Shown: positions 1,290 through 31,947 of the stretch, piece after piece | Position numbering within the stretch: the stretch's first letter is position 1 | Layout: every line of letters begins with the position of its first letter | Assembly (NCBI GenBank): GCA_002269645.1 | Contig: NIVC01001482.1 | Coordinates: 186,001-250,000, forward strand | Length of the DNA: 64,000 nt | DNA from: Macrostomum lignano | Lineage: Eukaryota | Direction: 5' to 3' | Program-made: the position numbers and the translations under genes | The notes under the pieces: generated by a model | Seen by the model: only the letters and a program-made list of their open reading frames with translations | Database searches by the model: none | What the model was told of the DNA's origin: nothing

Positions 1290-2600
1290 TTGCCACTTTT
1301 GGCACCACAAGCACTCATTTTAGTGTTGCAGGCACTCATTTTAGTGCTGCAGGCAACTCATTTTAGTGCCACAGGCACTCATTTTGGCACCACAAGCACT
1401 CATTTTGGCACTGCAGGCACTCATTTTAGCGTTGCAAGCACTCATTTTGCAACCGTAGGCACTCATTTTGGCGCTGCAGGCACTCATTTTAGTGTTGCAG
1501 GCACTCATTTTAGTGCTGCAGGCAACTCATTTTAGTGCCACAGGCACTCATTTTGGCACCACAAGCACTCATTTTGGCACTGCAGGCACTCATTTTAGCG
1601 TTGCAAGCACTCATTTTGCAACCATAGGCACTCATTTTGGCGCTGCAGGCACTCATTTTAGTGTTGCAGGCACTCATTTTAGTGCTGCAGGCAACTCATT
1701 TTAGTGCCACAGGCACTCATTTTGGCACCACAAGCACTCATTTTGGCACTGCAGGCACTCATTTTAGCGTTGCAAGCACTCATTTTGCAACCGTAGGCAC
1801 TCATTTTGGCGCTGCAGGCACTCATTTTAGTGTTGCAGGCACTCATTTTAGTGCTGCAGGCAACTCATTTTAATGCCACAGGCACTCATTTTGGCACCAC
1901 AAGCACTCATTTTGGCACTGCAGGCACTCATTTTAGCGTTGCAAGCACTTATTTTGCAACCGTAGGCACTCATTTTGGCGCTGCAGGCACTCATTTTAGT
2001 GTTGCAGGCACTCATTTTAGTGCTGCAGGCAACTCATTTTAGTGCCACAGGCACTCATTTTGGCACCACAAGCACTCATTTTGGCACTGCAGGCACTCAT
2101 TTTAGCGTTGCAAGCACTCATTTTGCAACCGTAGGCACTCATTTTGGCGCTGCAGGCACTCATTTTAGTGTTGCAGGCACTCATTTTAGTGCTGCAGGCA
2201 ACTCATTTTAGTGCCACAGGCACTCATTTTGGCACCACAAGCACTCATTTTGGCACTGCAGGCACTCATTTTAGCGTTGCAAGCACTCATTTTGCAACCG
2301 TAGGCACTCATTTTGGCGCTGCAGGCACTCATTTTAGTGTTGCAGGCACTCATTTTAGTGCTGCAGGCAACTCATTTTAGTGCCACAGGCACTCATTTTG
2401 GCACCACAAGCACTCATTTTGGCACTGCAGGCACTCATTTTAGCGTTGCAAGCACTCATTTTGCAACCGTAGGCACTCATTTTGGCGCTGCAGGCACTCA
2501 TTTTAGTGTTGCAGGCACTCATTTTAGTGCTGCAGGCAACTCATTTTAGTGCCACAGGCACTCATTTTGGCACCACAAGCACTCATTTTGGCACTGCAAG
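1290..2600. repeat. 21-bp satellite organised as a 169-bp higher-order repeat (about 7.7 copies)
   Basis: Subunit GCACTCATTTT(A/G)G(T/C)GCTGCAG; identical ORFs recur at 1468, 1637, 1806, 1975, 2144, 2313 and 2482 (169-bp period). Confidence 0.95.
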
Positions 2601-2701
2601 CACTCAATTGCCTCCTGGTTTTTGGTATCTATTGTATGAATACCCAACCCCACCCCTAGGCGATTAGAGGGGGGGCCATGGCCCCCCCAGCCCCCCTGGC
2701 T

Positions 2702-6104: not shown

Positions 6105-7615
6105 CTTTGATCTCTCTCACACAGCTGAGCAGTTAGACTCTCACACAGCTGAGCAGTTAAACTCTCTCACAGCTTTGCAGTTAGACTCTCACAGCTGAGC
6201 AGTTAGACTCTCACACAGCTGAGCAGTTAGACTCTCACACAGCTGAGCAGTTAGACTCTCACACAGCTGAGCAGTTAGACTCTCACACAGCTGAGCAGTT
6301 AGACTCTCTCACAGCTGAGCAGTTAGACTCTCACACAGCTGAGCAGTTAGACTCTCACACAGCTGAGCAGTTAGACTCTCACACAGCTGAGCAGTTAGAC
6401 TCTCACACAGCTGAGCAGTTAGACTCTCACACAGCTGAGAAGTTAGACTCTCTCACAGCTTTGCAGTTAGACTCTCACACAGCTGAGCAGTTAGACTCTC
6501 TCACAGCTTTGCAGTTAGACTCTCACACAGCTTTGCAGTTAGACTCTCACACAGCTGAGCAGTTAGACTCTCACACAGCTGAGCAGTTAGACTCTCACAC
6601 AGCTGAGCAGTTAGACTCTCACACAGCTGAGCAGTTAGACTCTCACACAGCTGAGCAGTTAGACTCTCACACAGCTGAGCAGTTAGACTCTCACACAGCT
6701 GAGCAGTTAGACTCTCTCACAGCTGAGCAGTTAGACTCTCTCACAGCTGAGCAGTTAGACTCTCACAGCTGAGCAGTTAGACTCACAGCTGAGCAGTTAG
6801 ACTCACAGCTGAGCAGTTAGACTCACAGCTGAGCAGTTAGACTCTCACACAGCTGAGCAGTTAGACTCTCACACAGTTGAGCAGTTAGACTCTCACACAG
6901 CTGAGCAGTTAGACTCTCACACAGCTGAGCAGTTAGACTCTCACACAGCTGAGCAGTTAGACTCTCACACAGCTGAGAAGTTAGACTCTCTCACAGCTTT
7001 GCAGTTAGACTCTCACACAGCTTTGCAGTTAGACTCTCACACAGCTGAGCAGTTAGACTCTCACACAGCTTTGCAGTTAGACTCTCACACAGCTTTGCAG
7101 TTAGACTCTCACACAGCTGAGCAGTTAGACTCTCACACAGCTGAGCAGTTAGACTCTCACACAGCTGAGCAGTTAGACTCTCACACAGCTGAGCAGTTAG
7201 ACTCTCACACAGCTGAGCAGTTAGACTCTCACACAGCTGAGCAGTTAGACTCTCTCACAGCTGAGCAGTTAGACTCTCTCACAGCTGAGCAGTTAGACTC
7301 TCACAGCTGAGCAGTTAGACTCACAGCTGAGCAGTTAGACTCACAGCTGAGCAGTTAGACTCACAGCTGAGCAGTTAGACTCTCACAAAGCTGAGCAGTT
7401 AGACTCTCACACAGTTGAGCAGTTAGACTCTCACACAGCTGAGCAGTTAGACTCTCACACAGCTGAGCAGTTAGACTCTCACACAGTTGAGCAGTTAGAC
7501 TCTCACACAGCTGAGCAGTTAGACTCTCACACAGCTGAGCAGTTAGACTCTCACACAGCTGAGCAGTTAGACTCTCTCACAGCTTTGCAGTTAGACTCTC
7601 ACACAGCTTTGCAGT
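6105..7615. repeat. 24-bp minisatellite (with 20/22-bp variants and an internal ~538-bp duplication)
   Basis: Unit ACAGCTGAGCAGTTAGACTCTCAC; variant pattern repeats at 6461 and 6999. Confidence 0.95.
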
Positions 7616-8697
7616 TAGGGTTTATTTATTTATTTATTTAGAAACCGATATAAAGTCTCTATCAATCAACTATAGTTGCGGGCAACTATATGAATTTACG
7701 GTATGCCCTCAACAATTTTACCAGCAGTATCTGTAAGTATTCTTTCATATGATTGACAATTGTGCTTTGAAGGGCAGGGCAGAAAAATGGTATCATATTT
7801 TACATGTAGACTCATTCAAATGAAGATTTTGTTCAATACGTTGTGAATACGCCCGCCCCCTGTCGCTGCCATGCCATAAAAAACTGCACGCAGCACCTGC
7901 AGTGGTCTCTGTGCCCCCCCCCCCTGAGCCCCTGCACTTGAATTGCAGCTGTACTGGAATTTCCAAGCTATATGTTTTAAACTCAAAACAAATTCTGAAT
8001 TCGCATAATAAAAGAGGTTAGTGGGGGTTAGGGGTGGGCTTCGGTATGCGACTAAGCGTGCTGCATAGGGCCACTGCATGGGGTGTTGGAGGGGCGGTTC
8101 GTAGCTTAGCAACTATCGATTAGCCTAAAGCTCCAATTGAGTGAGAGAGTTAGTTGATAGCAGCGTGAGAAAGAGGGGGGGGGCACAGGGCGCATTTTTC
8201 TGCTTTGAAAAACTGGATCTTCTAATTTTGGAAAGCTAATCATCACGCGGAGCTATGTACAGTACAATAGTAGTTACAGTCTGCCGGGGTGAGGGGTTGG
8301 CTAATTCTACTGCGGGCAGCTGCAGGTCTGTGTTCAAGGATTTCTAGCTCAGACTATTAGAGAGGCAGAGAGAATTTCGGTCTGGGACGGACGGCCGTCT
8401 CAGCGATCGCGCGCCCTGGCGTGCACACGGCACAGAGGAGAGAAGGGGCTATGTGGCTGAGCTAAGCCTGCCGCTATCTCCCCCCGGAGGGGGGCAGGGC
8501 TTGCTAGTCTTAATACAACATTTCTGCGCGTATATGGGCGGTGGGGGGGGGGTGTTTTTTCAATGCGGCAGCAGCAGCTGCGCCTGTAGTGGTATGCCTG
8601 TGCGCACATTCTATACTCTAGCCTGCAGTCTGCACCCCCCTCCCCTTGCAGTGGTCCGTGGGCGTTGTTAACAATATGCAGTCCGCGCTTTACACAC

Positions 8698-11176: not shown

Positions 11177-11613
11177 TGCTTTGTCTGTTGTCTCTGTCTT
11201 GGAATAATTTATTAGTTACTTAAGAATTATTTTAGTATATTAGACTAGCAATCTGCGTCCCCCGTTTGGGAGGCAACAGAGAAAGGTATAAAATTTTTGA
11301 ACTACTTACTGCATGTAGAAAGTAGATTGTGAACCTTAGGCAATGTGAAGGAGGCTGTATTTTGGTTTTTGGCGTTGTGAAATTTACGCGATATGAAACT
11401 TAGGCCATTTAGGCAATCCCCTATGAGTATTACAATTCTCCCCAAGAGTCAAAGCATTTTTGCGATCCCCCCCCCCGGAATCCTTGACTTCTTACCTTGA
11501 CTTACCTTAATCCTTGACTTCTTGCTTTGACTTCTCCAGCAATTCCCTAAAGAATTTTTGCCCCCGAAGCCTCGCGCTCATATTTTCCCGCAAAAAATTT
11601 CTCACCGCAGAAG

Positions 11614-12576
11614 ATGGCCTACAGCTACACATACGGCACCAACCCGTGCGGTCTGTACTACTCCGCTCCGGGGCCCTACGTTCAGTGCGCCGCGTCCTAC
11701 GCCTCTGTGCCTTGCGTGCAGGCGCCAGCGTACACTCTGGCTGCTCCAGCCTGCGCCCCGGCTGCGGCAGCCGCGCCCTGCGCCGTCGCTGCGCCAGCCT
11801 GCGCGCCAGCCTGCGCGCCAGCCTGCGCGCCAGCCTGCGCGCCAACCGTGACCTGCAGCCAGCCGTGTGGCAAGTCGTGCAGCTCCACCGAGCAGAAGGT
11901 GAGCACATATCGCTGGCACCCCTGTCCAATTTCCGAAGGTCGAACTTTAAAAGGATGATGCAAAAACGTACTGGTTCAGGTTGAAAAAAATTAACGTTTT
12001 TTTATCTTTGAAGTTGCATTTTTTCTTTAGTGAATAGACGAAAAAATTACCCCTTTCCTCTCCCCCTCTCTTCTCCATTCTATTACCTCTCCTCTTCTCC
12101 TCTCGTCTATTCTCGCCTTCTCTGGTCTCCTCTCCCCTTCCCTGCTCTCCTCTCCTCTCCCCTGCTCTCCTCTCCTCTCCCCTGCTCTCCTCTCCTCTCC
12201 TCTCCTCTCCCCTCCCCTGCTCTCCTCTCCTCTCCCCTCCCCTGCTCTCCTCTCCTCTCCCCTCCCCTGCTCTCCTCTCCTCTCCCCTCCCCTGCTCTCC
12301 TCTCTTCTCCCCTCCCCTGCTCTCCTATCTTCTCCCCTCCCCTGCCCTCCTCTCCTCTCCCCTCCCCTGCTCTTCTTTCCTCTCCCCTCCCCTGCTCTCC
12401 TCTCCCCTCCTCTCTTTTTGAAATTTCCAATCTGTGTTGCGTACAATCATTTAATCATCAAGTCGCCACTCTTACAGAGGACCTACCTGACTACCACTAA
12501 AGTGTGCGACCAGCCAGCCAAGACCACCTGCTATTACGACACGAAATCTTACAAGGGCGGCCGTCCGTGCTACTAG
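11614..12576 (+). CDS. Cys-Ala-Pro repeat protein A (127 aa, Tyr-rich N-terminus, 2 coding exons)
   Basis: Exons 11614-11898 (MAYSYTYGTNPCG...APACAPACAP...PCGKSCSSTEQK, donor GTGAGC) and 12478-12576 (RTYLTTTKVCDQPAKTTCYYDTKSYKGGRPCY*). The phase-0 intron position and both exon ends are conserved with paralogs B and C. Confidence 0.85.
12050..12415. repeat. CT-rich low-complexity repeat in the intron of CAP gene A
   Basis: (CTCTC/CCCCTG)n run between the two exons. Confidence 0.9.
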
Positions 12577-13211
12577 AAAAAAGCGAGATCTGGCCATGAC
12601 AACCAGCAAGAATGCAGAAAGGATCTCAGGCTGACAACCAGCCACTATGAACTGAACATTAACAGCTTGCTTTACTCCTGGACCACAACAAATGATAGCT
12701 TCACTCCCGCGAGCCAGCACTCCGACTGAGCGCTCACAAAAATATTGTCATTTATTCCGGTCAAATCTAAGAACATTTTGAAAAAATAAGTCCAACTTTT
12801 TGATACACAAGATTACTGTTCTATTAGACTTTTAGATACTAATTGGCCTTTGGTTGTCTCCTCGTGTGGCTGCTTGATTTCGTATTATTTTACGTCTATT
12901 AAACAGCTCTCACTTAGGCAGAATATTGCTGTCACCTGTCAAACTAGAATAAAGTTTCCTTATTTAAATCCTTTTAAGGTTTTCAAATTTGCCCTCAGTA
13001 AAATATTCTGCATGATGCAGTAGGTCCCAACTTACCTTAGGACTAACCAAACTTATAAATCATGTAACAGCTTATGGAATAGAGTTAGGCTATTAAGTTT
13101 AGGCTTAATTGTTTAAAACATCGTTATTGCAATATTTTACTACTCACAGTAACACTAAAGACATCTGGCTCCTGATTTCAGAGCATCATCTTCAACTAAC
13201 CAGCAGTCAGC

Positions 13212-13640
13212 ATGTCGTTCTGCAGCACCCAGGTCTCCTGCGCTCCTTCATGCAGCCCATGTGCTCCGGCCTGCGCTCCGTGTGCCCCGGCCTGCGCTCC
13301 CTGTGCTCCGGCCTGCGCTCCCTGTGCTCCGGCCTGCGCTCCCTGTGCTCCGGCCTGCGCTCCCTGTGCCCCGGCCTGCGCTCCCTGTGCTCCGGCGTGC
13401 AATCCTTGCGGAAAGACCTGCTGCGTTACTGAGCAGAAGGTAATTAAGCATGCAGTGTCAATAAACTAACATGCACGGTCATTACTGAATGGCCTCTAAA
13501 GTACATCTGAAGCGTTTGCATCGAAAATTTGAAACAAACCAAAGGCGCACAATCAACATTTTCAGCGAACCTACACCACCACGACAAAGGTGTGTGACGA
13601 CCCGCCCAAGACCACGTGCACCTACAAGCCCTGCTGCTAG
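13212..13640 (+). CDS. Cys-Ala-Pro repeat protein B (100 aa)
   Basis: Exons 13212-13439 (MSFCSTQVSCAPSCSP(CAPACAP)n..CNPCGKTCCVTEQK) and 13566-13640 (RTYTTTTKVCDDPPKTTCTYKPCC*). Upstream TATTTAAA at 12961, TCAGT near 12995, and a putative 5'UTR intron at 13020-13181. Confidence 0.88.
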
Positions 13641-14380
13641 CTGCATGCCGCTGAGAACTCCAGTTCTTCGAAATCTACTAGCTTCTTTCTTTGGACTACA
13701 GTAACACTGCAATTCAGTTTTTAACACAGTCACGAAACGCACTTTAAACAATAAGAACTTCTTGAATAAGAAACAAATTCACGGCACATTTTTAAGACCC
13801 ATGACTTTTAGATCTACTCTTTCACTCTTAAAAAATGGATTAAAAGCCTATAAAAATAGTCAATTCACTGTCAAACGTGTTTTAAATTACTCCCTTTCAC
13901 TTTAAATACTATTTAGAAGTAGAATCTGAATCCGAACGCTTGCAACCAATTCCCTCAAAATACACTGAAAATGCGATGCTATATTCATCACAGTGCACAG
14001 CAGTTGTCCTAACGTTATAATATTTTTTTTACTTTCATCTGACCCCTTTGCTCAGCAGACAGAATGTGTCTAAATAACTTAACAGCTAGCATACTTAGTA
14101 TATGGACTGTCATACTACTAGAATAGGCGTTCCTTATTTAAGTCCTTTTTAAAGTTTTCAAATTTTCCCTCAGTAAAATATTCTGCATGATGCAGTAGGT
14201 CCCAACTTACCTAGGACTAACCAAACTCATAAATCATTTAACAGCTTATTTTTAGTATATTGGATTAGCGATTGTTTAAAACATCTTTACTGCGATATTT
14301 TACTCGTACTACTCACAGTAGCACTAACGGCATCTGTCTCCTGATTTCAGAGCATCATCTTCAACTAACCAGCAGTCAGC

Positions 14381-14814
14381 ATGTCGTTCTGCAGCACCCA
14401 GGTCTCCTGCGCTCCTTCATGCAGCCCATGTGCTCCGGCCTGCGCTCCGTGTGCTCCGGTCTGTGCTCCGTGTGCCCCGGTCTGCGCTCCGTGTGCTCCG
14501 GCCTGCGCTCCGTGTGCCCCGGCCTACACTCCGTGTGCCCCGGCCTGCACTCCGTGTGCCCCGGCCTGCGCTCCCTGTGCCCCGGCGTGCAATCCTTGCG
14601 GAAAGACCTGCTGTGCTACTGAGCAGAAGGTGTGTCAATACTGCAACCTACGAGTAACATGCAAGATCGTTACTGGCTGAAGCTTCCGCATTGAGAAATT
14701 GAAAAAGAAAACAAAGACACGCACCCTCAAAATTTTCAGCGAACCTACACCACCACGACAAATGTGTGTGACGAGCCGCCACAGACCACGTGCACCTACA
14801 AACCGTGCTGTTAG
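14381..14814 (+). CDS. Cys-Ala-Pro repeat protein C (107 aa), recent duplicate of B
   Basis: Exons 14381-14629 and 14740-14814 (RTYTTTTNVCDEPPQTTCTYKPCC*); the promoter, 5'UTR intron and 3'UTR are duplicated relative to gene B. Confidence 0.88.
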
Positions 14815-15685
14815 CTGCCGCTGAGAACTCCATTTCTTCGAAGTCTGCTATAGCTACCTTCTTTCTTTGAACTACAATAACTGAAATTAAGTTTTTAAAG
14901 CAATTCGATACGCAATTTTACTCTTTCAATTCTACAAAAACAGTCAATTGATGGTCAAAACTAGTTTTGAAATTTTCTCTTTCACGTTTGACCAACTGGT
15001 ACATTAGTTTAATTTATTAATATTAAATTATTAATTTAGTGCAAAATTTATTTTAAATACAATGAAACTGCAGACAGCATTCATCACTTTGTATCAGCTA
15101 TCCTAACGTTACATTGATTTATTTATCTTATATTATTTTTATTGTATAAAAACCGAGGTGCTTTCTAGCTCCTTCAAATATTATTGACTTATAAAGAAAC
15201 CCGTTAAATGAAAGCAAATGTCAGTTAAAACAATGATATAAACTCGTAACTGTAGTTGCTTGACAAAAGATTATAATTTAGTATTTATCTGTGAAACAAA
15301 GTTATCTTTTGCTCTGAGGAGTAATTATAGTTTAAAACATGGTAACAGCGTATATTTCAAAACATACACACAGATGATTGAAATACTTACTATAGTATCG
15401 TCTCGTCTATTGCGTGAGATGACTGATAAGCCTAGTTGCATATTTTCTTATACAAACAAGTCTACATAAGAAAAGTCATCACGTCAACGGCGAAAAAATC
15501 ACCAACAGTCTTGGTTTTTAATTCTACATAAACAATTGACTTTTGAGCCTACTGGTGATTTGCTTGCCTAGAAGATTTGCTATAATAGATTTTTCAGCCT
15601 TTCAATATTTTTAGTAATGGTCTTTTATTATGGCAGCCTGATCTAATTATTAAAGATAATATTCATTCTCTTTTGTTATTAAAAC

Positions 15686-18600
15686 ATGGCCAGCAGTGCC
15701 AGCAACAAGGAATTTATTGTAAATCAGAAGTATCGTCTAATAAAGAAAATTGGAAGTGGATCTTTTGGAGAAATATATCTTGGTGTAAACCAAACCAATG
15801 GAGAAGTAAGCAATCCTTGTTTTGTTTTTTACAAACAAAAAATCCAAATCACACAAGTTTAGCTTTAACTAACAAATGAATTCTTTAATAATAATAGGCC
15901 TAGTTTATTAAAAAAAACCACAACACATTGCTCACTAAAATTAAAAACTAGGTAAACCTAGGAAATGATGTTAGAGACTTTGTAATTAGTGAGAGTCCCA
16001 TGACTTGCCAATGTTATGTATGCAAATAGCAAATTTGAACAAAAATAGTTTTTTGCAAATAAGTAATTGTGAAATGCAATTTTGTGTAAAAGAAATTGAA
16101 AGCTAAAATAAAAAATATTTATTAATATTATAGTTATACCATAGGTTAGGAAGTGACATGTTATAAGGATCTAGCCAGCCACTAACTAGAGTCTAACATA
16201 TGAGTAATAATAACTCAAACAAGGTAGAATACTCTTATTTTCTAATTTTCTAATTAAGCATAGAATTTTATATTTTAATAACTGTATTTTTAATGTTTGT
16301 ATAAATAAGCAAGCTACAAGCTGGGAGAATAAGTCTGAGACACTATGGTATAACTAAGCTAAGCTTCATAAATCTATAGTCATGGTAGTGCTTAGTCTTA
16401 GCCTCTATTCATAGCTAGTTTTTGTAGAAGCAATTGGTATAATTTGGCAAACTAGTTGTTTTAGCAATTCAAAAGTTAGTATAGAGTCTAGAGAGAGTAA
16501 AAAGAATAAAGATTAGACATTTAATCCCTTCCTTATTTATAGTAAATTTTCCCAATGAAGTCCCTGTGAAACTATCTGCATCGCATGTCATTTCCCATAC
16601 ATGCATGCGCAACCTCCAAAATTTGGTCCGCCATGCAACTTAGTTTTAACAAAAATCCGACATAGTTTTTGGCCAAAAATGCAACTTACATGTAAAAAAA
16701 ACCCTAAAGCAAAATTAACACAACTTTGGGTAAACAACAAGAGTAACTATGACTGTCTTATTAAGTTAAAATGCCTTGTCAGCTACTTAGTACTACTACT
16801 TTGGTAGCGACTTCCTTGATTGGCCGCCAAATCAGTCGGCCGGATCGGCCAACTGGGCCAACTGTTGCACATGTATGTTCCCATATCTTCTAGATATCAT
16901 CGCAATTCTATTCTGGCTAATTCTCATAGTCTCCCATTCTTATGCAACTTCTAAAATGTCTCTGTTTAAAAATGTAATTGATAAAGGCATACAACCCCAC
17001 CTCACATAAAAGCATACAACCCCTTTAAAGTGGAAGCAGACTTTTAGGGTGGCCTGCACTTGCCCTTTGCACTGCTATCCTTGAGCACTTATGGCTTTTT
17101 GTAAGAGTGCAGCTATCTACAACTGCTATACTCCACCACACTTTGATAACAATGTAATTCCCTAATTTCTTAGCCTAAACCCTAAGTCCTATTCCTAATA
17201 GTTCCTACAATAGTCCCTAAATGACAGTTGATTACTATCTTTATACATGTACACTAGGATTTCCCAGTATACAACAAGGGTCTTACCATTTTTCAGTGTA
17301 TATCAAGGTATATTGCAATATACATAATAGTAGATACATTGTGTCAAATGACAATTTTTTAATATTAGCACACAAACCCAGTATACAAATAAGGTCTCAT
17401 CATTTTTTGGCATTTAACCTGGCATACACTAATATATAATCCAAACTATAGCAGTCATAAAAAGAAAAGTTTATACGAAGGGTGCGCAAAAAGTTTTGGC
17501 AACTGGGTTCCCAATTGCAGATAAATTGTTAGTAAATCTTAAAACGTTATTAAAGTCCTTCAATGTAATCTCCGCCACGTTCTATGCATTTCTGGTGACG
17601 GCGGATCCATGCCTCGAAGGCAGCGCGGTACTCTGAAGCTGGCATGGTGTTCAGCTCTGAATTAATGCAGCGAGCCAGGTCTTGGGGCCACTGAAAATGG
17701 CATCCAGCCATGCGTTCGGTCAGCTTTGGGAATGCCCAGAAGTCGCAGGGTGCCAAATCAGGACTGTACAGAGGGTGCGGTATCACTTTGAGCTTGTTAT
17801 CGGCCAAAAAGCTCGTTGTCATGGCCGCAGTGTGGCTGGAGGCATTGTCGTGGTGCAAGTGAATTCTGCCACTTTGGAGGCGGGTTGGCTGCTTTTCCAT
17901 GACTGAAGCCACGACTTTAGGCAAAACCTCGCCAGTATAGAACGTGGCATTGACGTTCTGTCCATTTGGCACCATAACAACTGTCTCTGGCCCGTTGATG
18001 CTGAAAAAGACGACGAACATCTGCTTCCTTAAGCAAAACCCTGGGCGCAGAACAGTTGGACAGTCTTTATCGGAACCAATCCAAACCTTGTTTTGGTTCT
18101 TGTGAAGCACTTGGAAGTAGTAGAACCACTTCTCATCACCAGTCACGACATCAGTAAGTCGTTTAGTGCCACCTTCGCCAAAGCATCACAGAAATTCTTG
18201 GCTGCATCGAACCCTCTCCTGCTTCTGCTCTGCTGTCAGTGCATGAGGTACCCAACGGGCCGTGACCTTGCAGAGGCCAAGATGGTCATGCAAGATGGTT
18301 CGGACACTGCCATCAGAAATGCCAATTGTCTGGCTAAGTAGTGCAACAGTGATATTGCGATCTTCGTCCACCAGCTGTCGCACAGCAACAATGTTCTGCT
18401 CGGTCACGGATGTCATTGGCCTCCTAGAACGAGGGCTGTCGGTCATGGAGCGTCAACCAGCACTGACCAATTCAATCCAACGGGCGACGGTGCGGTACGA
18501 AGGGGCTTGATCTGCTACAACTTGGACTAGCTTGGCATGAATTTTGGTGGCGTTTTCTCCAAGCTGCGATCGCATGAAAACATAAAATCTCCACTGATCA

Positions 18601-20278
18601 GCAGTGATATTTTCCATTTGAAGGCTGAAAACGAGACTGTACGTTAATCAAAATGCTCTAGGAAGCAAAAAAATCAATGCAATGAGCTGAAAACTTATGG
18701 ACAAACGCAAAATATGGTCATATTTATGAGATTAAAAAATGGCTACATTTAAACGTTTATTTAAAAAGTTATGAGCCAGTTGCCAAGACTTTTTGCGCAC
18801 CCCTCGTATATTATTAGTTTATATTATGTTATAATTTTCATTTTCCTCTAAATATTTTTCTTAATACTGTATTCCTAAATCTTTATATATATGCTAGATT
18901 TTTCTAGTGTATAATGGACCTGAAAATATGCTTGGCATATAAAATCTAGTGTATCACAATAGTTCACTATTGTAAATTTGTGCCATTTCATCACACTCTT
19001 AAATCCATTATACAATAGACCAAAAAGTGACTTCCTACACTGTAAATTCAAGTTTACACCAAAAAACAAATGTTTTTATGATATAATATATCAGAAATTA
19101 TTAAAGAAACATTGCAACAATAAAGGCCCCTTTTCAAAGGCTGCCAAAATTGAATATAAAATGCCGAAATTGAATGCAGTTTGCTGAATTTGAATATCAG
19201 TTTGTCTAAATAGAAACTTGAATTGCTAAAATTTAATGTAGTTTATCAAAATTGGTTTTTGGTTTGTCAAATTTGAATGTAGTGTAGATGTGCAGCCATA
19301 GCCAAAATGAAAGCCAGTTTGCCAAAATTAAATGTAGTTTTATCAAAAAAGAATGCAAAAAGGTGTAGTTCCAATATATGGTGCATGGAGCAATGTTTCC
19401 TAACTTTGGATTGGACATAGATAGGCCTATTAGTTAAAAAATAATAAAAACTTGTTGGAAATATTTATAAAGAATAAGTTTGTGAGCAAAAATGATTATA
19501 ATGCTTAATAGGCAAAATATTTTACAAAAATGTTGAAAATTTTAAATGCAAAAAGTTTTGTAACTTTTTTATTACTTTTCTTTTTATAGGAAACCTTTCT
19601 TATAGGTTACTTGGGGTCCATTTTTAAAGCCTAAGTTGAGTTTTTACCCAAAGGCTAAAAGTAATGGCTAGTAATAATAAGTCTAAGTTATGAATTTTTT
19701 GTGTAAGCTAATTTAGGTAATTTAAACAAAAAGCTATAAAACTCTTATTTGGCAATTAGAAATCAGTCTATAATCATATATAGGCTTCTTGTGGATAGAT
19801 ATTTCTTATAAAATAGCATTTTCATAGCATTTCATTGCTCTATTAGTTTAGGTGTAATCTAGAGATTTCCATTTCTTTGAAATGGTCTACTTTGGAATTA
19901 CTCAGTAGAGGTCCTAAAATCCTAGGAATTCTAATAATCATTATTAAAGTAGTTTGACTGTTAATGCTCTATATGTGCAGTTGAACAAAGATTGAAATTC
20001 AGTATTAGAGGCTGCAAAGTCATTAACAAACAGCTTTGTAGATAAATTGCAAATCTCTAATATAATATACTATACAAATATCCATTTGACTGTTTATAAA
20101 ACTCAGCAAAATACACGCGTTTCTTCCTTTTATTTCTAAGGAAATTGCTGTCAAACTGGAGAGTCAGAAGGCGCGCCATCCGCAGCTTCTGTATGAAAGC
20201 AAACTGTACAAGCTGCTGCAGGGCGGCATTGGCATTCCACATGTGCGGTGAGTCTGAGGGATCTTGGCGCTGTTGTGC

Positions 20279-20330
<52 letters not shown>

Positions 20331-20474
20331 CTTCTGTCTGTCTGTCCTGTCTGTCTGTCTGTCTGTCCTTCTGTCTGTCTGTCCTTCTGTCTGTCTGTCC
20401 TTCTGTCTGTCTGTCTGTCCTTCTGTCTGTCTGTCCTTCTGTCTGTCTGTCTGTCCTTCTGTCTGTCTGTCCTT

Positions 20475-20505
<31 letters not shown>

Positions 20506-20524
20506 ACTGTCTGTCTGTCTGTTT

Positions 20525-20557
<33 letters not shown>

Positions 20558-22854
20558 ACTGTCTGTCTGTCTGTCTGACTGTCTGTCTGTCTGTCTGTCT
20601 GTCTGCCTGTTTGTCTGTCTGTCTGCCTGTCTGTCTGTCTGACTGTCTGTCTGTCTGTCTGTCTGCCTGTTTGTCTGTCTGTCTGTCTGCCTGTCTGTCT
20701 ATCTGTCTGTCTGTCTGCCTGACACTCCCTGTCCATTGTCCTGAACCCGTGCCCACTCTGTCTCCCCGCCCTCGCAGCTGGTTCGGTGTAGAGAAGGACT
20801 ACAACGTGCTGGTGATGGACCTGCTGGGCCCCAGCCTGGAGGACCTGTTCAGCTTCTGCTCTCGCCGGTTCACTATGAAGACCGTGCTGATGCTGGCCGA
20901 CCAGATGATCAACCGCATCGAGTACGTGCACAACAAGAACTTCATTCACCGCGACATCAAGCCGGACAACTTCCTCATGGGAATCGGGCGTCACTGCAAC
21001 AAGGTGAGTCTGAGGGTGCAAATAATCCCATTCCCCAGCTTAATTATCCCCAATCCTTAACCAAAAATCCCAATCCCCAACCCAATAATCCAAATCCCCA
21101 ACCCAATAATCCAAATCCCCAACCCAATAATCTAAATCCCCAACCCAATTATCCAAATCCCCAACACAATAATCCAAATCCCCAAACCCAATAATCCAAA
21201 TCCCCAACCCAATTATCCAAATCCCCAACCCAATAACCCAAATCCCCAACACAATAATCCAAATCCCCAAACCCAATAATCCAAATCCCCAACCCAATTA
21301 TCCAAATCCCCAACCCAATAACCCAAATCCCCAACACAATAATCCAAACCCCCAACCCTATAATCCAAATCCCCAACCCAAGTATCCAAATCCTCAACCC
21401 AATAACCCAAATCCCCAATGCAATAATCCAAGTCCTTAACCCAATAATCCAAATCCCAAACCCAATAACCCAAATCCCTAACGCAATAATCCAAGTCCCA
21501 ACCCAATAACCCAAATCCCCAACACAATAATCCAAACCCCCAACCCTATAATCCAAGTCCTTAACCCAATAATCCAAATCCCAAACCCAATAACCCAAAT
21601 CCCCAATGCAATAATCCAAGTCCTTAACCCAATAATCCAAATCCCAAACCCAATAACCCAAATCCCCAACGCAATAATCCAAGTCCCAACCCAATAATCC
21701 GAATTCCTTATTCCCATTGAAGAATCTGAATTCCTTAACTAAGAAATCCTATAAATCGATTTCCGCCCCGCCCGCGCCAGGTGTTCATCATTGACTTCGG
21801 ATTGGCTAAAAAGTTTCGCGATAGTCGTTCCGGAAAGCACATCCCTTACCGGTGAGCATATGATTAGTCATCAAGAGATCTGTTATCTAAAAATGATTAA
21901 TGAATTAGTCTGGTATAAAATGTCCCGAACTCAATTCCCGCAGCGAGGACAAGAACCTCACTGGCACGGCCCGCTACGCTTCAATCAATGCTCACCTGGG
22001 CATCGAACAGTCCAGACGCGATGACATGGAAGCGCTTGGCTACGTGCTGATGTACTTTAATAGGGGCTCGCTACCGTGGCAGGGACTGCAGGTGAAATCC
22101 TTTCCGGCTTTGTTTCATTCATCTACGTTGCTTCATATTCACCGATTATTGCTCATCTCCATTGCTCATAGTTTCGTAAATCTAAGGCTTCATAGTTTCA
22201 TATTCATTACTCTTTTTACTCATAGCTTTTATCTATGGTCATGGCTAGAAAACCCATGGTCATAGCTTATAGATCTATGATCATAGCTCATAAATGTATG
22301 GTCAAAGCTCATAGATCTATGGTCATAGTTTATTAATCCATGATCATTGGTCATAAATCCATGGTCATTGGTCATAAATCCATGGTCATTGGTCATAAAT
22401 CCATGGTCATAGCTCATAGATCTATGGTCATAGTTCATTAATCCATGATCATTGGTAATAAATCATAGCTCATAAATCCCGGCTCATAGCTTATGTCTCA
22501 CAGTTCATCACTATATACTATCTTAATTCCCAATCCCAAAGCCTCAATTCCCATAACTCCCAACCGCAGGCCAACACCAAGAAGCAGAAGTACCAGAAGA
22601 TCAGCGAGAAGAAGATGTCAACGCCAGTCGAGTCCCTGTGCAAAGGCTTCCCGGCCGAGTTCACCATGTACTTGAACTATTGCCGCGGCCTTCGATTCGA
22701 GGAGGCTCCCGACTATATGTACCTCAGACAGCTCTTCCGGATCCTGTTCCGCACTCTCAATCACCAGTTCGACTACACCTTTGACTGGACTCTGCTCAAA
22801 CAGCGGAGCAGCGCAGCCGCCACCGCCGCCTCCGCTTCGGGCGCCGCTCAGTGA
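15686..22854 (+). CDS. CSNK1A1: Casein kinase I alpha (about 318 aa, 6 coding exons)
   Basis: Exons 15686-15805, 20141-20247, 20778-21003, 21781-21851, 21944-22091, 22570-22854, all GT-AG with consistent phases. Motifs [100 protein letters not shown]. Confidence 0.97.
16600..16877. mobile_element. hAT-type MITE, copy 2 (28S-like fragment at about 16728-16791), in CK1 intron
   Basis: TIRs CATGCATGCGCAAC and (reverse complement) CATACATGTGCAAC; perfect 8-bp TSD TTCCCATA at 16592-16599 and 16878-16885; colinear with 297-582. Confidence 0.9.
17476..18806 (-). mobile_element. Full-length mariner (DD34D) transposon in CK1 intron
   Basis: About 31-bp TIRs CGA(A/G)GGGTGCGCAAAAAGT(T/C)TTGGCAACTGG, TA target duplications on both sides, 1331 bp long. 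Confidence 0.96.
17550..18617 (-). pseudogene. Mariner transposase (355 codons) with two in-frame TGA stops and no frameshift
   Basis: [16 protein letters not shown]...; [21 protein letters not shown] and [10 protein letters not shown] with 34-residue D-D spacing; stops at 18453-18455 and 18186-18188. Confidence 0.93.
20275..20720. repeat. (TGTC)n microsatellite in CK1 intron
   Basis: Direct inspection. Confidence 0.97.
21025..21700. repeat. CCCAA(T/C)-rich minisatellite in CK1 intron
   Basis: Units such as CCCAATAATCCAAATCCCCAA. Confidence 0.93.
22240..22500. repeat. Degenerate ~20-bp repeat in CK1 intron
   Basis: ATCCATGGTCATTGGTCATAA-like units. Confidence 0.85.
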
Positions 22855-26718: not shown

Positions 26719-29700
26719 ATGGAAAATTTGATTCAACTGTTAGTCCGCGGCTTCAAAGGCAACATCATGACTATAGATATTCACAAGGTGAGCTTGCTAG
26801 GCTCTACATGTACTTTTATACTGTTTTTGTCCTTCAGCTGGACCCCTCCTCTCCTTCAGCTGGACCCCCCTCTCCTTCAGCTGGACCCCTTCTCCTTCAG
26901 CTGGACCCCCTCTCCTTCAGCTGGACCCCTCCTCTCCTTCAGCTGGACCCCCCTCTCCTTCAGCTGGACCCCCTCTCCTTCAGCTGGACCCCTCCTCTCC
27001 TTCAGCTGGACCCCCCTCTCCTTCAGCTGGACCCCCTCTCCTTCAGCTGGACCCCCTCTCCTTCAGCTGGACCCTCTCCTTCAGCTGGACCCTCTCCTTC
27101 AGCTGGACCCTCTCACCTTCAGCTGGACCCCCTCTCCTTCAGCTGGACCCCCTCCTCTCCTTCAGCTGGACCCCCTCCTCTCCTTCAGCTGGACCCCCTC
27201 TCCTTCAGCTGAACCCCCTCCTCTCCTTCAGCTGGACCCTCTCACCTTCAGCTGGACCCCCTCTCCTTCAGCTGGACCCCCTCCTCTCCTTCAGCTGGAC
27301 CCCCTCCTCTCCTTCAGCTGGACCCCCTCCTCTCCTTCAGCTGGACCCCCTCTCCTTCAGCTGAACCCCCTCCTCTCCTTCAGCTGGACCCTCTCACCTT
27401 CAGCTGGACCCCCTCTCCTTCAGCTGGACCCCCTCCTCTCCTTCAGCTGGACCCCCTCCTCTCCTTCAGCTGGACCCCCTCTCTTTCAGCTGGACCCCCT
27501 CCTCTCCTTCAGCTGGACCCCCTCCTCTCCTTCAGCTGGACCCCCTCCTCTCCTTCAGCTGGACCCCCTCCTCTCCTTCAGCTGGACCCCCTCTCCTTCA
27601 GCTGGACCCCCTCTCCTTCAGCTGGACCCCCTCCTCTCCTTCAGCTGGACCCCCTCCTCTCCTTCAGCTGGACCCCTCCTCTCCTTCAGCTGGACCCCCT
27701 CTCCTTCAGCTGGACCCCCTCTCCTTCAGCTGGACCCCCTCCTCTCCTTCAGCTGGACCCCCTCCTCTCTTTCAGCTGTAACCCCGTCCTGGCATATTTT
27801 CTAATAAATGAGTACAAGTCGAAATACAAAAGTGCTCAAATCGTTCAATATTCATGATTTAAATTTTAAGCACGCAACATTGGCGAATGGCGCCCCCACA
27901 AGACACCCAACATTGGCGCCCCTAAGGATTGCGGCCCCCCCCCCCCCAAAACAAAATCCTGAGTACGCCACTGCGTCCTGCTACATTCATTTCGATCCAA
28001 TACCGGTACCGCCGGTACGATACATTCCACACCCACCGCGCCGCTCTTGCGCAGGATGCCCAGATCAAGGATCTGTTTCGCAAGCTGGAGGATAAGACAG
28101 GACTCAAGCCGGGTGCCTACCAGATGGTCTACACGAGCAAGACTATCGACTTTGAGCAGCACAAGGACAAGCACCTGACCGAGTTTCACCTGGAGAATCA
28201 CTCCAATCTCTGCATGGTGCTGCGTCTGCACGGCGGATCCAAGGTAAGTTCACTCCGAAGCGAGAGCACTCTCCGACGCCACGTGCCAAAGGGAGAACCC
28301 GGTGGAAGAATCCCGGTGGCAGAATCCCGGTAGGAGAATCCCGTTGGCAGAATCCCTGTGAGAGAATCCCTGTGAAAGAATCCCGGTGGGAGAATCCGGG
28401 TGAAATAATCCCGGTGGGGGAATCCCGGTGGAAGAATCCGGGTGAAATAATCCCGGTGAAATAATCCCGGTGAAAGACTCCCGGTAGGAGAATCCGGGTG
28501 AAAGAATCCCGGTGGGGGAATCCCGGTGGAAGAATCCGGGTGAAATAATCCCGGTGAAATAATCCCGGTGAAAGACTCCCGGTAGGAGAATCCGGGTGAA
28601 AGAATCCCGGTGGGGGAATCCCGGTGGAAGAATCCGGGTGAAATAATCCCGGTGGGGGAATCCCGGTTGAAGAATCCGGGTGAAATAACCCCGGTGGGGG
28701 AATCCCGGTGGGTGAATCCCGGTGGGGGAATCCCGGTGGGTGAATCCCGGTGGCCGAATCCCGGTGGAAGAATCCTGTTGAGAGAAGGTAGAAAAGTTCT
28801 AGCCAGAGAATCTCACGGACCGGGAAAAATTTTGTGCTTACAGGAGCTGGACGACTGCGTTGAGCTCACCGACCTGCCGGACATGATCACCTGGGACGAT
28901 GACAAGGACGGCAAGCGGGCGAAGATGCCCTGCGGCCACGCCATCGGCCCGGACAGCCTCACCAGCTATTGCCACAGTCTGCTGGATACGGGGCGCTACC
29001 GGTTCCTCTGCCCCTGGGTGGACCCCGCCAACGCGGGCGTCGGCTGCCCCGCCGAGTGGGACTTCGTGATCGTGCGACGGCTGGCCGTGCTCACCGACGC
29101 TGAGAAGCGCGAGTTTGAGCGCAAAATCTCTGAGAACTACCTGCGACGGGCGGTCAATATTCAGGTAAGTATTGGCAGAGAAACGCTAGGCCTATAAGGT
29201 ACAAAAACACACAGACAGACAACCAGACACCCAGAAATCCAAATGGACACTAAGACACCCAAATGGACATTAAGACACCCAAATGGACACTAAGACACCC
29301 AGATGGACGCTAAGACATCCAAATGGACACTAAGACACCCAAATGGACCCTAAGACACCCAAATGGACACTAAGACATCCAAATGGACACCAAGACACCC
29401 AAATGGACACTAAGACATCCAAATGGACACTAAGCCATCCAAATGGACACTAAGACACCCAAATGGACACTAAGACATCCAAATGGACACTAAGACACCC
29501 AGATGGACACTAAGCCATCCAAATGGACACTAAGACATCCAAATGGACACTAAGACACCCAGATGGACACTAAGACATCCAAATGGACACTAAGACATCC
29601 AAATGGACACTAAGACACCCAAATGGACACTAAGACACCCACCCAAATGGACACCAAGACACCCAAATGGACACTAAGACACCCAGATGGACACTAAGAC

Positions 29701-31947
29701 ATCCAAATGGACACTAAGACATCCAAATGGACACTAAGACACCCAAATGGACACTAAGACACCCACCCAAATGGACACCAAGACACCCAAATGGACACTA
29801 AGACATCCAAATGGACACTAAGCCATCCAAATGGACACTAAGACACCCAAATGGACACTAAGACATCCAAATGGACACTAAGACACCCAGATGGACACTA
29901 AGCCATCCAAATGGACACTAAGACATCCAAATGGACACTAAGACACCCAGATGGACACTAAGACATCCAAATGGACACTAAGACATCCAAATGGACACTA
30001 AGACACCCAGATGGACACTAAGACATCCAAATGGACACTAAGACACCCAGATGGACACTAAGACATCCAAATGGACACTAAGACATCCAAATGGACACTA
30101 AGACACCCAGATGGACACTAAGACATCCAAATGGACACTAAGACACCCAGATGGACACTAAGACATCCAAATGGACACTAAGACACCCAAATGGACCCTA
30201 AGACACCCAAATGGACACTAAGACATCCAAATGGACACCAAGACACCCAAATGGACACTAAGACATCCAAATGGACACTAAGCCATCCAAATGGACACTA
30301 AGACACCCAAATGGACACTAAGACATCCAAATGGACACTAAGACACCCAGATGGACACTAAGCCATCCAAATGGACACTAAGACATCCAAATGGACACTA
30401 AGACACCCAGATGGACACTAAGACATTCAAATGGACACTAAGACATCCAAATGGACACTAAGACACCCAAATGGACACTAAGACACCCACCCAAATGGAC
30501 ACCAAGACACCCAAATGGACACTAAGACATCCAAATGGACACTAAGCCATCCAAATGGACACTAAGACACCCAAATGGACACTAAGACACCCAGATGGAC
30601 ACTAAGACATCCAAATGGACACTAAGACACCCAGATGGACACTAAGACATCCAAATGGACACTAAGACATCCAAATGGACACTAAGACACCCAGATGGAC
30701 ACTAAGACATCCAAATGGACACTAAGACACCCAGATGGACACTAAGACATCCAAATGGACACTAAGACACCCAGATGGACACTAAGACATCCAAATGGAC
30801 ACTAAGACATCCAAATAGATGGGCACTAAGGCATTCAGACAGATGGACACTGAGACACCCAGAAAGACAGATGGACACTGAGACACCCAGAAAGACAGAT
30901 GGACACTGAGACACCCAGAAAGACAGATGGACACTGAGACACCCAGAAAGACAGATGGACACTGAGACACCCAGAAAGACAGATGGACACTGAGACACCC
31001 AGAAAGACAGATGGACACTGAGACACCCAGAAAGACAGATGGACACTGAGACACCCAGAAAGACAGATGGACACTGAGACACCCAGAAAGACAGATGGAC
31101 ACTGAGACACCCAGAAAGACAGATGGACACTGAGACACCCAGAAAGACAGATGGACACTGAGACACCCAGAAAGACAGATGGACACTGAGACACCCAGAA
31201 AGACAGATGGACACTGAGACACCCAGAAAGACAGATGGACACTGAGACACCCAGAAAGACAGATGGACACTGAGACACCCAGAAAGACAGATGGACACTG
31301 AGACACCCAGAAAGACAGATGGACACCCGGACAGACAGATAGCCACTAACACATTCAGACTCGCTCTCAACCCCGCAGGAGTGCCCAGGCTGCAGGTCGT
31401 TCTGCCAGCGCCGCAGCGCTCGCGATCGCAGAATGATCTGTCCGGTGTGCTCGGAGCCGGACAAGGGGCGGCTGTTCGAGTTCTGCTGGTACTGCTTGAA
31501 CAAGTGGCGCACCCCGGGAACGACCAAGTGCGGCAACGACATCTGCTCGGGCAAGGACCCTCGGATCGCCATTCTGGCCGCGGCGAAGGTCAAGACGATC
31601 GTCGGCGTGCCCGGTAGGTCACCGAGGCAATTAGCAATTCTTTATAAACCTAAACCTGTGCCATTCGAAATTCTCATGGAATAACAACAGACTCGTTAAA
31701 GTAGCGTTAAAGTGCAATTTTTATAACCATAATCTCGTCTCCAGACGTGCCCGGCCGCCGCGCCTGCATCAAGTGCGGCATGATCATTGAGCACGTGACC
31801 GCCTGCAAGCACATGAAGTGCGTCTGCGACCAAGAGTTCTGCTTCATCTGCTTGAAGCCGAAGAACGACAGGGGCAACTGGCAGTGCGGCAGCTACAGGG
31901 AGCCGTGCGCTGTGGCGCCGAGGCAAACCGAGGTGCCCGGGGAGTGA
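26719..31947 (+). CDS. Ubiquitin-like domain + RBR (RING1-IBR-RING2) E3 ligase, paralog 1 (about 338 aa)
   Basis: Exons 26719-26787, 28055-28243, 28844-29164, 31379-31613, 31745-31947 splice in frame. Ubl MENLIQLLVRGFKGNIMTIDIHK..VLRLHGG; partial RING1 MPCGHAI..FLCP; IBR ECPGC..CPVC..FCWYC; RING2 CIKCG..ACKHMKCVCDQEFCFIC. AATAAA at 31983. Confidence 0.9.
26830..27785. repeat. 19-22 bp minisatellite in RBR1 intron 1
   Basis: Unit CCTTCAGCTGGACCCC(CTC)TCT. Confidence 0.95.
27800..27972 (-). mobile_element. One terminus of a CAGTGGCGTA-type MITE adjoining the minisatellite
   Basis: Minus strand reads CAGTGGCGTACTCAGGATTTT...poly-G, the same architecture as the ends at 1221 and 61474; the other terminus was not found. 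Confidence 0.55.
28295..28780. repeat. ATCCCGGTG-based minisatellite in RBR1 intron 2
   Basis: Repeated GAATCCCGGTG / AATCCGGGTG units. Confidence 0.92.
29205..31335. repeat. Compound minisatellite in RBR1 intron 3: 20-bp units switching to related 28-bp units near 30840
   Basis: AAATGGACACTAAGACA(C/T)CC, then AGATGGACACTGAGACACCCAGAAAGAC. Confidence 0.96.

What the first reader, a model, noticed from the sequence alone, without database searches (positions are those of the whole stretch)
11614..14814. Cluster of three small Cys-Ala-Pro repeat proteins: candidate novel structural protein family
Seen: three spliced paralogs (127, 100, 107 aa) with (CAP-A-CAP)n cores, a conserved PCGK(S/T)C..TEQK|RTY.TTT.VCD.P..TTC.Y C-terminal module split by the same phase-0 intron, no signal peptide, and terminal PCC in B and C. 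Established: Cys-X-Pro triplet repeats mark disulfide-crosslinked sperm-tail proteins (Drosophila Mst87F CGP family, mammalian ODF1), and Cys-rich repeats mark keratin-associated proteins. Inference: these are intracellular crosslinking structural proteins (sperm accessory structures, stylet or epidermal hardening) or metal binders. I recognise no known family, and the non-repeat C-terminal module may be an undescribed domain.
Basis: partly seen in the sequence, partly recalled or inferred. Interest (0 to 1): 0.8.

Follow-up and report, generated by a model that had tools for sequence, protein, structure and literature searches.

The report
Orphan flatworm Cys-Ala-Pro repeat genes
Three neighbouring small genes of the flatworm Macrostomum lignano really do encode cysteine-alanine-proline repeat proteins with a shared tail that has no detectable relative in any other organism, but their role, most likely as cross-linking building blocks of a hardened cell structure, is untested.

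Summary
Three two-exon genes lie on the + strand (A 127 aa, B 100 aa, C 107 aa). Each has a GT..AG phase-0 intron between TEQK and RTY. Each has a CAP-repeat core (CAPA units in A, CAPACAP heptads in B and C) and a shared cysteine-bearing C-terminal module.

They are real genes under selection. Between B and C the exons are 91-100% identical and the intron 67%. B-C dN/dS is about 0.2. Between A and B synonymous sites are saturated, yet the module is kept.

The organism is Macrostomum lignano or a very close relative. Gene A is 98% identical to UniProt A0A1I8IME0, an 'uncharacterized protein' of the same length. B and C are absent from the protein collection.

An exhaustive profile search of the module against 1.84 billion representative proteins found only that one entry. 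Pfam gives only sub-threshold hits to the Drosophila male-specific sperm protein family (MSSP). PDB gives only periodicity artefacts. AlphaFold predicts disorder.

So this is a lineage-restricted family that resembles Mst87F, ODF1 and keratin-associated proteins by convergence, not homology. A role as an intracellular disulfide cross-linker in sperm or stylet is plausible but has no expression evidence. A metal-binding role is not excluded. Interest is modest.

The parts
11614..11898 (+). Gene A exon 1. It encodes a Tyr-rich N-terminus, a CAPA repeat (12-bp array at 11791-11844) and the first half of the module (...CSQPCGKSCSSTEQK).
   Evidence: 98% identical at protein level to UniProt A0A1I8IME0
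11899..12477 (+). Gene A intron: 579 nt, GTGAGC...TTACAG, phase 0. It contains a 25-bp CT-rich minisatellite at 12096-12414.
12478..12576 (+). Gene A exon 2: RTYLTTTKVCDQPAKTTCYYDTKSYKGGRPCY followed by a TAG stop.
12943..13211 (+). Conserved upstream region of B (putative promoter and 5' UTR). It is 89.5% identical to the C upstream region and holds the palindrome CTGCATCATGCAG at 13008-13020, TATA-like sites, and a TTTCAG acceptor-like site 30 nt before the ATG.
13212..13439 (+). Gene B exon 1: MSFCSTQVSCAPSCSP, then 7 CAPACAP heptads (21-bp array at 13260-13400), then PCGKTCCVTEQK.
13440..13565 (+). Gene B intron: 126 nt, GTAATT...TTTCAG, phase 0. It is only 67% identical to the C intron.
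13566..13640 (+). Gene B exon 2: RTYTTTTKVCDDPPKTTCTYKPCC followed by a TAG stop.
14117..14380 (+). Conserved upstream region of C, the counterpart of 12943-13211. The palindrome lies at 14183-14195.
14381..14629 (+). Gene C exon 1: 8 heptads (21-bp array at 14429-14590), some degenerate (CAPVCAP, CAPAYTP, CAPACTP).
14630..14739 (+). Gene C intron: 110 nt, GTGTGT...TTTCAG, phase 0.
14740..14814 (+). Gene C exon 2: RTYTTTTNVCDEPPQTTCTYKPCC followed by a TAG stop.

Best explanation
Shown: a tandem cluster of three two-exon genes forms a Macrostomum-restricted ('orphan') family. They encode small proteins of 10-13 kDa with 12-24% Cys. None has a recognisable signal peptide, and the one protein modelled (A) is predicted to be disordered. 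Each has a Cys-Ala-Pro repeat core and a conserved C-terminal module carrying 5-7 cysteines. B and C are a recent tandem duplicate and A is an old paralogue. The coding sequence is under purifying selection.

Inferred: the proteins are made in the cytoplasm as flexible, proline-kinked chains that display a thiol every 3-4 residues. When the cell structure they fill matures and oxidises, these thiols form many intermolecular disulfides, and the terminal CC of B and C acts as an extra cross-linking end. That would harden an intracellular matrix, in the way Mst87F-type proteins, ODF1 and keratin-associated proteins work. In this animal the most likely sites are the sperm (bristles or shaft) or the intracellularly formed copulatory stylet. 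The tissue and the chemistry are not shown.
For: Gene reality:
- Canonical phase-0 introns sit at the same codon in all three genes.
- Between B and C the exons are 91-100% identical, the upstream region 89.5% and the intron 67%.
- B-C dN/dS outside the repeat is 0.21. The A-B module has dN 0.17 with saturated dS, and 12 synonymous against 7 non-synonymous codon differences.
- Variation among repeat units is concentrated at third codon positions (18 of 27 differences). A encodes CAP with different codons and a different unit length (12 bp against 21 bp), so the composition is kept at the protein level.
- An independent 127-aa UniProt model exists for A.

Intracellular location:
- An in-frame stop lies 15 nt upstream of the ATG in B and C, and there is no hydrophobic N-terminus.

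Cross-linker analogy:
- Cys makes up 24% of B and 23% of C, spaced every 3-4 residues, and pI is near neutral.
- The only Pfam signal is sub-threshold MSSP, the Drosophila sperm-tail Cys-Gly-Pro family.
- AlphaFold predicts no fold, as expected for a matrix protein.

Weak priors:
- 54% of germline-enriched M. lignano genes are Macrostomum-specific (PMC5816591).
- Flatworm stylets form intracellularly (Bruggemann 1986, as cited in PMC4398949).
Against: - No expression, localisation or proteomic data for these genes could be reached, and spliced transcripts were not seen directly.
- The MSSP hit is below threshold and driven by composition.
- The same composition (high Cys, C-x2-C and C-x3-C spacing, small size, no signal peptide) also fits a metal-thiolate protein.
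- A has an acceptor-like CAG 3 nt before its ATG, so an upstream coding exon cannot be excluded for A.
- The AlphaFold run used only 4 sequences, so low confidence is not proof of disorder.
Confidence: 0.4

Rival explanations
1. Metallothionein-like metal binders or thiol buffers. The regularly spaced cysteines would chelate Zn, Cu or Cd in thiolate clusters in the cytoplasm, and the tandem repeat expansion would raise capacity.
For: - B and C are small, lack a signal peptide, have 23-24% Cys with C-x2-C and C-x3-C spacing, and have few aromatic residues.
- Modular repeat growth is typical of metallothioneins (own knowledge).
- There are very weak PDB hits to cytosolic copper storage proteins (E 0.2-0.9).
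Against: - No metallothionein Pfam family appears even at E<=10.
- There are no C-x-C motifs.
- The content of about 20% Pro and 20% Ala is atypical.
- Paralogue A has 13 Tyr and only 12% Cys.
- The copper storage protein hits are not significant.
Confidence: 0.15
2. Secreted structural proteins (eggshell, rhabdite, adhesive or seminal material) that enter the secretory pathway through an unrecognised signal or a missed 5' exon.
For: - Acceptor-like sites lie just upstream of each ATG.
- A's reading frame is open across its candidate acceptor.
- Tyr-rich plus Cys-rich composition recalls tanned extracellular materials (own knowledge).
- The C-x3-C spacing with a terminal CC recalls cnidarian minicollagen Cys-rich domains (own knowledge).
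Against: - In B and C an in-frame TAA lies between the candidate acceptor and the ATG, so no N-terminal extension is possible.
- No hydrophobic core is present: the best 10-residue Kyte-Doolittle (KD) hydropathy mean is 1.2-1.8, and those stretches are broken by Pro.
- The UniProt model of A also starts at MAYSY.
Confidence: 0.1
3. Non-functional or barely functional young ORFs riding on minisatellites in a genome full of them.
For: - The window carries dozens of minisatellites, several with periods divisible by 3, giving long open frames.
- The other frames of the CAP arrays are also open.
- B and C are not in any protein collection.
Against: - Exons are far better conserved than the intron.
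- dN/dS is 0.2, and the module is conserved despite saturated dS.
- Intron position and phase are conserved.
- CAP is encoded by different codons and unit lengths in A than in B and C.
Confidence: 0.05

Closest known systems
Drosophila Mst84D/Mst87F male-specific sperm proteins (Pfam PF03940, MSSP)
   Same: Both are small, signal-less proteins built of Cys-X-Pro triplets, encoded in a tandem gene cluster. MSSP is the only Pfam family with any signal (19.2 and 15.9 bits).
   Different: The scores fall below the 21.2-bit cut-off. The repeat here is Cys-Ala-Pro, not Cys-Gly-Pro, and B and C have a single Gly. The PCGK...TEQKRTY...VCD...TTC module has no counterpart. The similarity is compositional, so there is no evidence of homology.
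Mammalian ODF1 and keratin-associated (high-sulfur) proteins
   Same: Both are cytoplasmic Cys/Pro-rich repeat proteins thought to harden an intracellular structure through disulfides. A also has a Tyr-rich region that recalls high-Gly/Tyr keratin-associated proteins (own knowledge).
   Different: No Pfam hit to Keratin_B2, other keratin-associated families or the alpha-crystallin domain of ODF1 appears at E<=10. The repeat units differ and the lineages are unrelated.
RNA polymerase II CTD heptads (best PDB sequence hits)
   Same: Both are heptad repeats with two prolines spaced 3 and 4 residues apart, and B aligns in register with YSPTSPS arrays (E 2.5e-22). This suggests a similar extended, turn-rich, disordered chain.
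   Different: Only the prolines match. The Cys positions align to Ser, Thr or Tyr. This is a periodicity and low-complexity artefact, not homology, and the C-terminal module has no PDB hit.
UniProt A0A1I8IME0 (Macrostomum lignano, uncharacterized protein)
   Same: It is 127 aa long, 98% identical to gene A, and has the same exon structure. It is the same gene or a homeologous copy.
   Different: There are two substitutions (V to I, and A to T in the repeat). It carries no annotation, and no B- or C-type entry exists.

Membership tests
Pfam PF03940 MSSP (Mst84D/Mst87F) | Whole-protein score at or above the Pfam gathering threshold (21.2 bits) | tested here: not met
   C scores 19.2 bits, B scores 15.9 bits and A has no hit.
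Pfam PF03940 MSSP (Mst84D/Mst87F) | Cys-Gly-Pro tripeptide repeats | tested here: not met
   The repeats are Cys-Ala-Pro, and B and C each contain one Gly.
Pfam PF03940 MSSP (Mst84D/Mst87F) | Testis-specific, post-meiotically translated sperm-tail component | not testable with these tools
   No expression data were reachable.
Keratin-associated proteins / ODF1 | Match to the Keratin_B2-type or other keratin-associated protein Pfam families, or to the ODF1 alpha-crystallin domain | tested here: not met
   None is listed at E<=10.
Metallothioneins | Match to a metallothionein family profile | tested here: not met
   No metallothionein family appears in the Pfam scan at E<=10.
Metallothioneins | High Cys content in C-x-C, C-x-x-C or CC motifs, few aromatic residues, metal-thiolate clusters | tested here: inconclusive
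   B and C have 23-24% Cys with C-x2-C, C-x3-C and CC spacing but no C-x-C. A has 12% Cys and 13 Tyr. Metal binding is not testable here.
Cnidarian minicollagen Cys-rich domain | A C-x3-C-x3-C-x3-C-x3-CC domain flanking a collagen Gly-X-Y helix, with a signal peptide | tested here: not met
   A has C-x3-C spacing, and B and C have ...C-x3-CC. There are no Gly-X-Y repeats and no signal peptide. The family definition is from own knowledge.
The family defined here (A, B, C, A0A1I8IME0) | CAP repeat core plus the PCGKxC..TEQK|RTYxTTTxVCDxPxxTTCxY module, split by a phase-0 intron | tested here: met

The most novel reading that the evidence does not exclude
These proteins are the disulfide-cross-linked matrix of a flatworm hard part, either the intracellularly formed copulatory stylet or the stiff sperm bristles of Macrostomum. 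They would then be the first molecular components identified for platyhelminth sclerotised structures. The conserved C-terminal module would be a new small Cys-based (disulfide or zinc) assembly domain.
Probability: 0.2. Interest if true: 0.6.

Novelty: new variant of a known kind. Interest (0 to 1): 0.3.

Why it matters
If the cross-linker reading is right, the cluster gives concrete candidate genes for the material of the Macrostomum stylet or sperm bristles. The Macrostomum papers searched here gave no molecular composition for either structure. The literature retrieved uses both traits in studies of sexual selection and sexual conflict. RNAi and transgenesis are established in this species, so the idea is cheap to test. 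It would also be another independent invention of Cys-X-Pro repeat hardening proteins, alongside those of insects and mammals. If the reading is wrong, this is one more taxonomically restricted low-complexity family of unknown role.

Tried and rejected
- Pfam scan at E<=10 gave only sub-threshold MSSP, DEC-1 and SARG noise.
- Word-indexed searches of 5.8 billion proteins with B and with the full-length profile found only A0A1I8IME0. The other hits were low-complexity bacterial or metagenomic proteins, for example P0002, a lipoprotein-like CEPAC repeat protein.
- The exhaustive HMMER search with the module profile gave one hit, the same protein.
- Exact look-up of A, B and C found none of them in the collection. 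No contig is on record for P0001.
- The metagenome contig scan with module patterns gave 115 pattern matches, none confirmed.
- PDB searches returned RPB1 CTD hits for the repeat, which I rejected as a proline-periodicity artefact, and nothing for the module.
- AlphaFold2 on the 4-sequence alignment gave pLDDT 35, so no fold search was worth running.
- Literature searches for the accession, the repeat strings, and Macrostomum plus stylet, cysteine or testis found nothing about this family.
- The supplements of the prostate ISH screen hold no matching sequence.
- Mlig-sperm1 and RNA815_7008 are unrelated genes.
- A protamine-like role was rejected: pI is 7.2-8.5 and each protein has only 4-8 basic residues.
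- I looked for a promoter shared between A and B/C and found only a marginal 23-nt motif.

Full report
**1. What is there**

| Gene | Exon 1 | Exon 2 | Length |
|---|---|---|---|
| A | 11614-11898 | 12478-12576 | 127 aa |
| B | 13212-13439 | 13566-13640 | 100 aa |
| C | 14381-14629 | 14740-14814 | 107 aa |

- Exon 1 lengths are 285, 228 and 249 nt, so every intron is phase 0. Each one falls between the codons for ...TEQK and RTY....
- All introns are GT..AG.
- A has a Tyr-rich N-terminus (13 Tyr in the whole protein) and a short CAPA array with a 12-bp period.
- B and C have 7-8 CAPACAP heptads with a 21-bp period.
- All three share the module PCGK(S/T)C..TEQK|RTY.TTT.VCD.P..TTC.Y. B and C end in KPCC and A ends in RPCY.
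- tblastn of the exon peptides against the whole window finds these three copies and nothing else above noise.

**2. Are they real genes or open frames on minisatellites?**

The window is crowded with minisatellites, and several give long open frames, so the question is fair. Four results say the genes are real.

- The B and C loci are a tandem duplicate (12943-13724 against 14117-14898). Within it the exons are 91-100% identical, the 269 bp upstream 89.5% and the intron only 67%.
- Outside the repeat, B-C dN/dS is 0.21. Between A and B the module has dN 0.17 while synonymous sites are saturated, with 12 synonymous against 7 non-synonymous codon differences in 31 codons.
- Among the 15 heptad units of B and C, 18 of 27 minor-variant bases sit at third codon positions.
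- A spells Cys-Ala-Pro with different codons (GCG CCA GCC TGC) and a different unit length from B and C (TGT GCT CCG GCC TGC GCT CCC). The amino-acid pattern is what is conserved, not the DNA repeat.

An independent gene model of the same length and exon structure exists for A (see section 3). Direct transcript evidence for the splice junctions could not be obtained with these tools.

**3. Organism and relatives**

- Searching B against 5.8 billion proteins returned one meaningful hit. It is UniProt A0A1I8IME0, 'Uncharacterized protein', Macrostomum lignano, 127 aa, 98% identical to A. The window is therefore M. lignano or a very close relative.
- The exact sequences of A, B and C are not in the 15-billion-protein collection, and no B- or C-type protein is present.
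- A profile of the C-terminal module, searched by full HMMER against 1.84 billion representative proteins, found only that same protein (E 1e-18) and nothing else at E<=0.001.
- The full-length profile also found nothing else credible.
- A metagenome contig scan with module patterns confirmed nothing.
- The family is therefore lineage-restricted as far as these collections show. They probably under-sample Macrostomum transcriptomes.

**4. Comparison with known families**

- Pfam lists nothing above threshold. The only notable signal is PF03940 MSSP, the Drosophila male-specific sperm protein family (Mst84D/Mst87F). C scores 19.2 bits and B 15.9 bits against a cut-off of 21.2. That family is built of Cys-Gly-Pro repeats, so the match is compositional.
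- No keratin-associated, ODF1 or metallothionein family appears even at E<=10.
- Against PDB sequences, B hits the RNA polymerase II CTD at E 2.5e-22. The alignment shows only the two prolines of each heptad in register, with Cys opposite Ser, Thr or Tyr. This is a periodicity artefact.
- The module has no PDB hit.
- AlphaFold2 on the 4-sequence alignment gives mean pLDDT 35 with no secondary structure. That fits disorder but is weak evidence given the shallow alignment. It gives no support to calling the module a folded 'domain'.

**5. Where the protein is made**

- In B and C an in-frame TAA lies 15 nt upstream of the ATG, downstream of the only acceptor-like site (TTTCAG). No N-terminal extension is possible.
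- None of the three has a hydrophobic N-terminal core.
- For A, an acceptor-like CAG lies 3 nt before the ATG and the frame is open across it. A missed upstream coding exon cannot be strictly excluded, although the UniProt model starts at the same Met.
- The proteins are 9.9-12.9 kDa with pI 7.2-8.5. Cys makes up 11.8% of A, 24% of B and 23.4% of C, spaced every 3-4 residues in the repeat.

**6. Most likely mechanism**

This section is inference. A cytoplasmic, proline-kinked, probably unfolded chain with a thiol every 3-4 residues and a terminal CC has two main plausible roles.

- It may be a substrate for dense intermolecular disulfide cross-linking when a structure matures. Drosophila Mst87F-type proteins, mammalian ODF1 and keratin-associated proteins work this way (established knowledge).
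- It may be a metal-thiolate binder.

I favour the cross-linker reading (about 0.4) for three reasons.

- Paralogue A is Tyr-rich and only 12% Cys, which is unlike a metallothionein.
- There are no C-x-C motifs.
- The Pro and Ala content is high.

In M. lignano the obvious intracellular hardened structures are the sperm bristles or shaft and the stylet. Flatworm stylets are reported to form intracellularly (Bruggemann 1986, cited in PMC4398949). Macrostomum-specific genes make up 54% of germline-enriched genes (PMC5816591). Both are only weak priors. None of the Macrostomum papers searched mentions this family or gives a molecular composition for stylet or bristles.

**7. Rivals**

| Rival | Confidence | Main point against |
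|---|---|---|
| Metallothionein-like binder | 0.15 | Not excluded; needs metal analysis |
| Secreted structural protein | 0.10 | Argued against by the upstream stop and the non-hydrophobic N-terminus |
| Non-functional ORFs on repeats | 0.05 | Argued against by the selection signals |

**8. Novelty and verdict**

- The claim 'no known family' is confirmed by exhaustive search.
- One member is already deposited as an uncharacterised protein, and B and C appear unannotated.
- The functional interpretation is reasonable but untested.
- The family is best described as a lineage-specific, convergent variant of the Cys-X-Pro repeat hardening proteins, with its own C-terminal module.
- Interest is 0.3. 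It is a real and tidy orphan family and a testable candidate in an RNAi-tractable animal, but nothing yet ties it to a structure or a phenotype.

Noticed in passing
window 1-64000 (e.g. 32036-35786, 6114-7618, 46024-47924, 29233-30816, 40832-41915): Minisatellite density is extreme, with dozens of arrays of 15-43-bp units. They include a 30-bp unit repeated 125 times (3.75 kb, 96% matches), and many create long spurious ORFs in several frames.
   Followed up: partly
window 1297-2606 and 61625-62358: The same 21-bp minisatellite family (core CACTCATTTTAGCGCYGCA) occurs at both ends of the window. The first array has a higher-order 169-bp period at 99% identity.
   Followed up: no
window 50892-56059, - strand: Exons of a Bicaudal-D homologue (Pfam BicD, E 1.7e-68 and 4.8e-29). 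Its introns appear to be filled by minisatellites at 52040-52789 (42-bp unit) and 54083-55485 (ATGGATGG).
   Followed up: partly
window 42768-43310, - strand: An ORF with a sub-threshold HhH-GPD base-excision repair match (21.4 bits against a 26.2 cut-off). By eye it looks like an OGG1-type glycosylase exon.
   Followed up: no
window 20611-21060, + strand: A protein kinase domain exon (Pfam Pkinase, E 1e-9), CK1-like by eye. It is flanked by a (CTGT)n microsatellite at 20278-20721 and a 21/42-bp minisatellite at 21021-21704.
   Followed up: no
window 17550-18146, - strand: A mariner/DDE-type transposase remnant, with sub-threshold DDE_3 and Transposase_1 hits.
   Followed up: no
window 27929-28333 and 28610-29197, + strand: A ubiquitin-like ORF ending in LRLHGG is followed by a Cys/His-containing ORF, with a 14/98-bp minisatellite (28291-28786) between them. 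Neither has a Pfam hit. They may be two exons of one gene.
   Followed up: no
window 13008-13020 and 14183-14195: A perfect palindrome CTGCATCATGCAG is conserved about 200 bp upstream of the ATG of both B and C, inside the well-conserved upstream block. It is a candidate regulatory site.
   Followed up: partly
window 11229-11252 and 14250-14272: A 23-nt motif TTTTAGTATATTRGAYTAGCRAT is shared upstream of A and C (20 of 23 identical). It is marginal against shuffles, where the best shuffle equals the observed score.
   Followed up: partly
window 12096-12414: The intron of gene A is mostly a 25-bp CT-rich minisatellite of about 13 copies, which explains why it is 579 nt long against 110-126 nt in B and C.
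   Followed up: no
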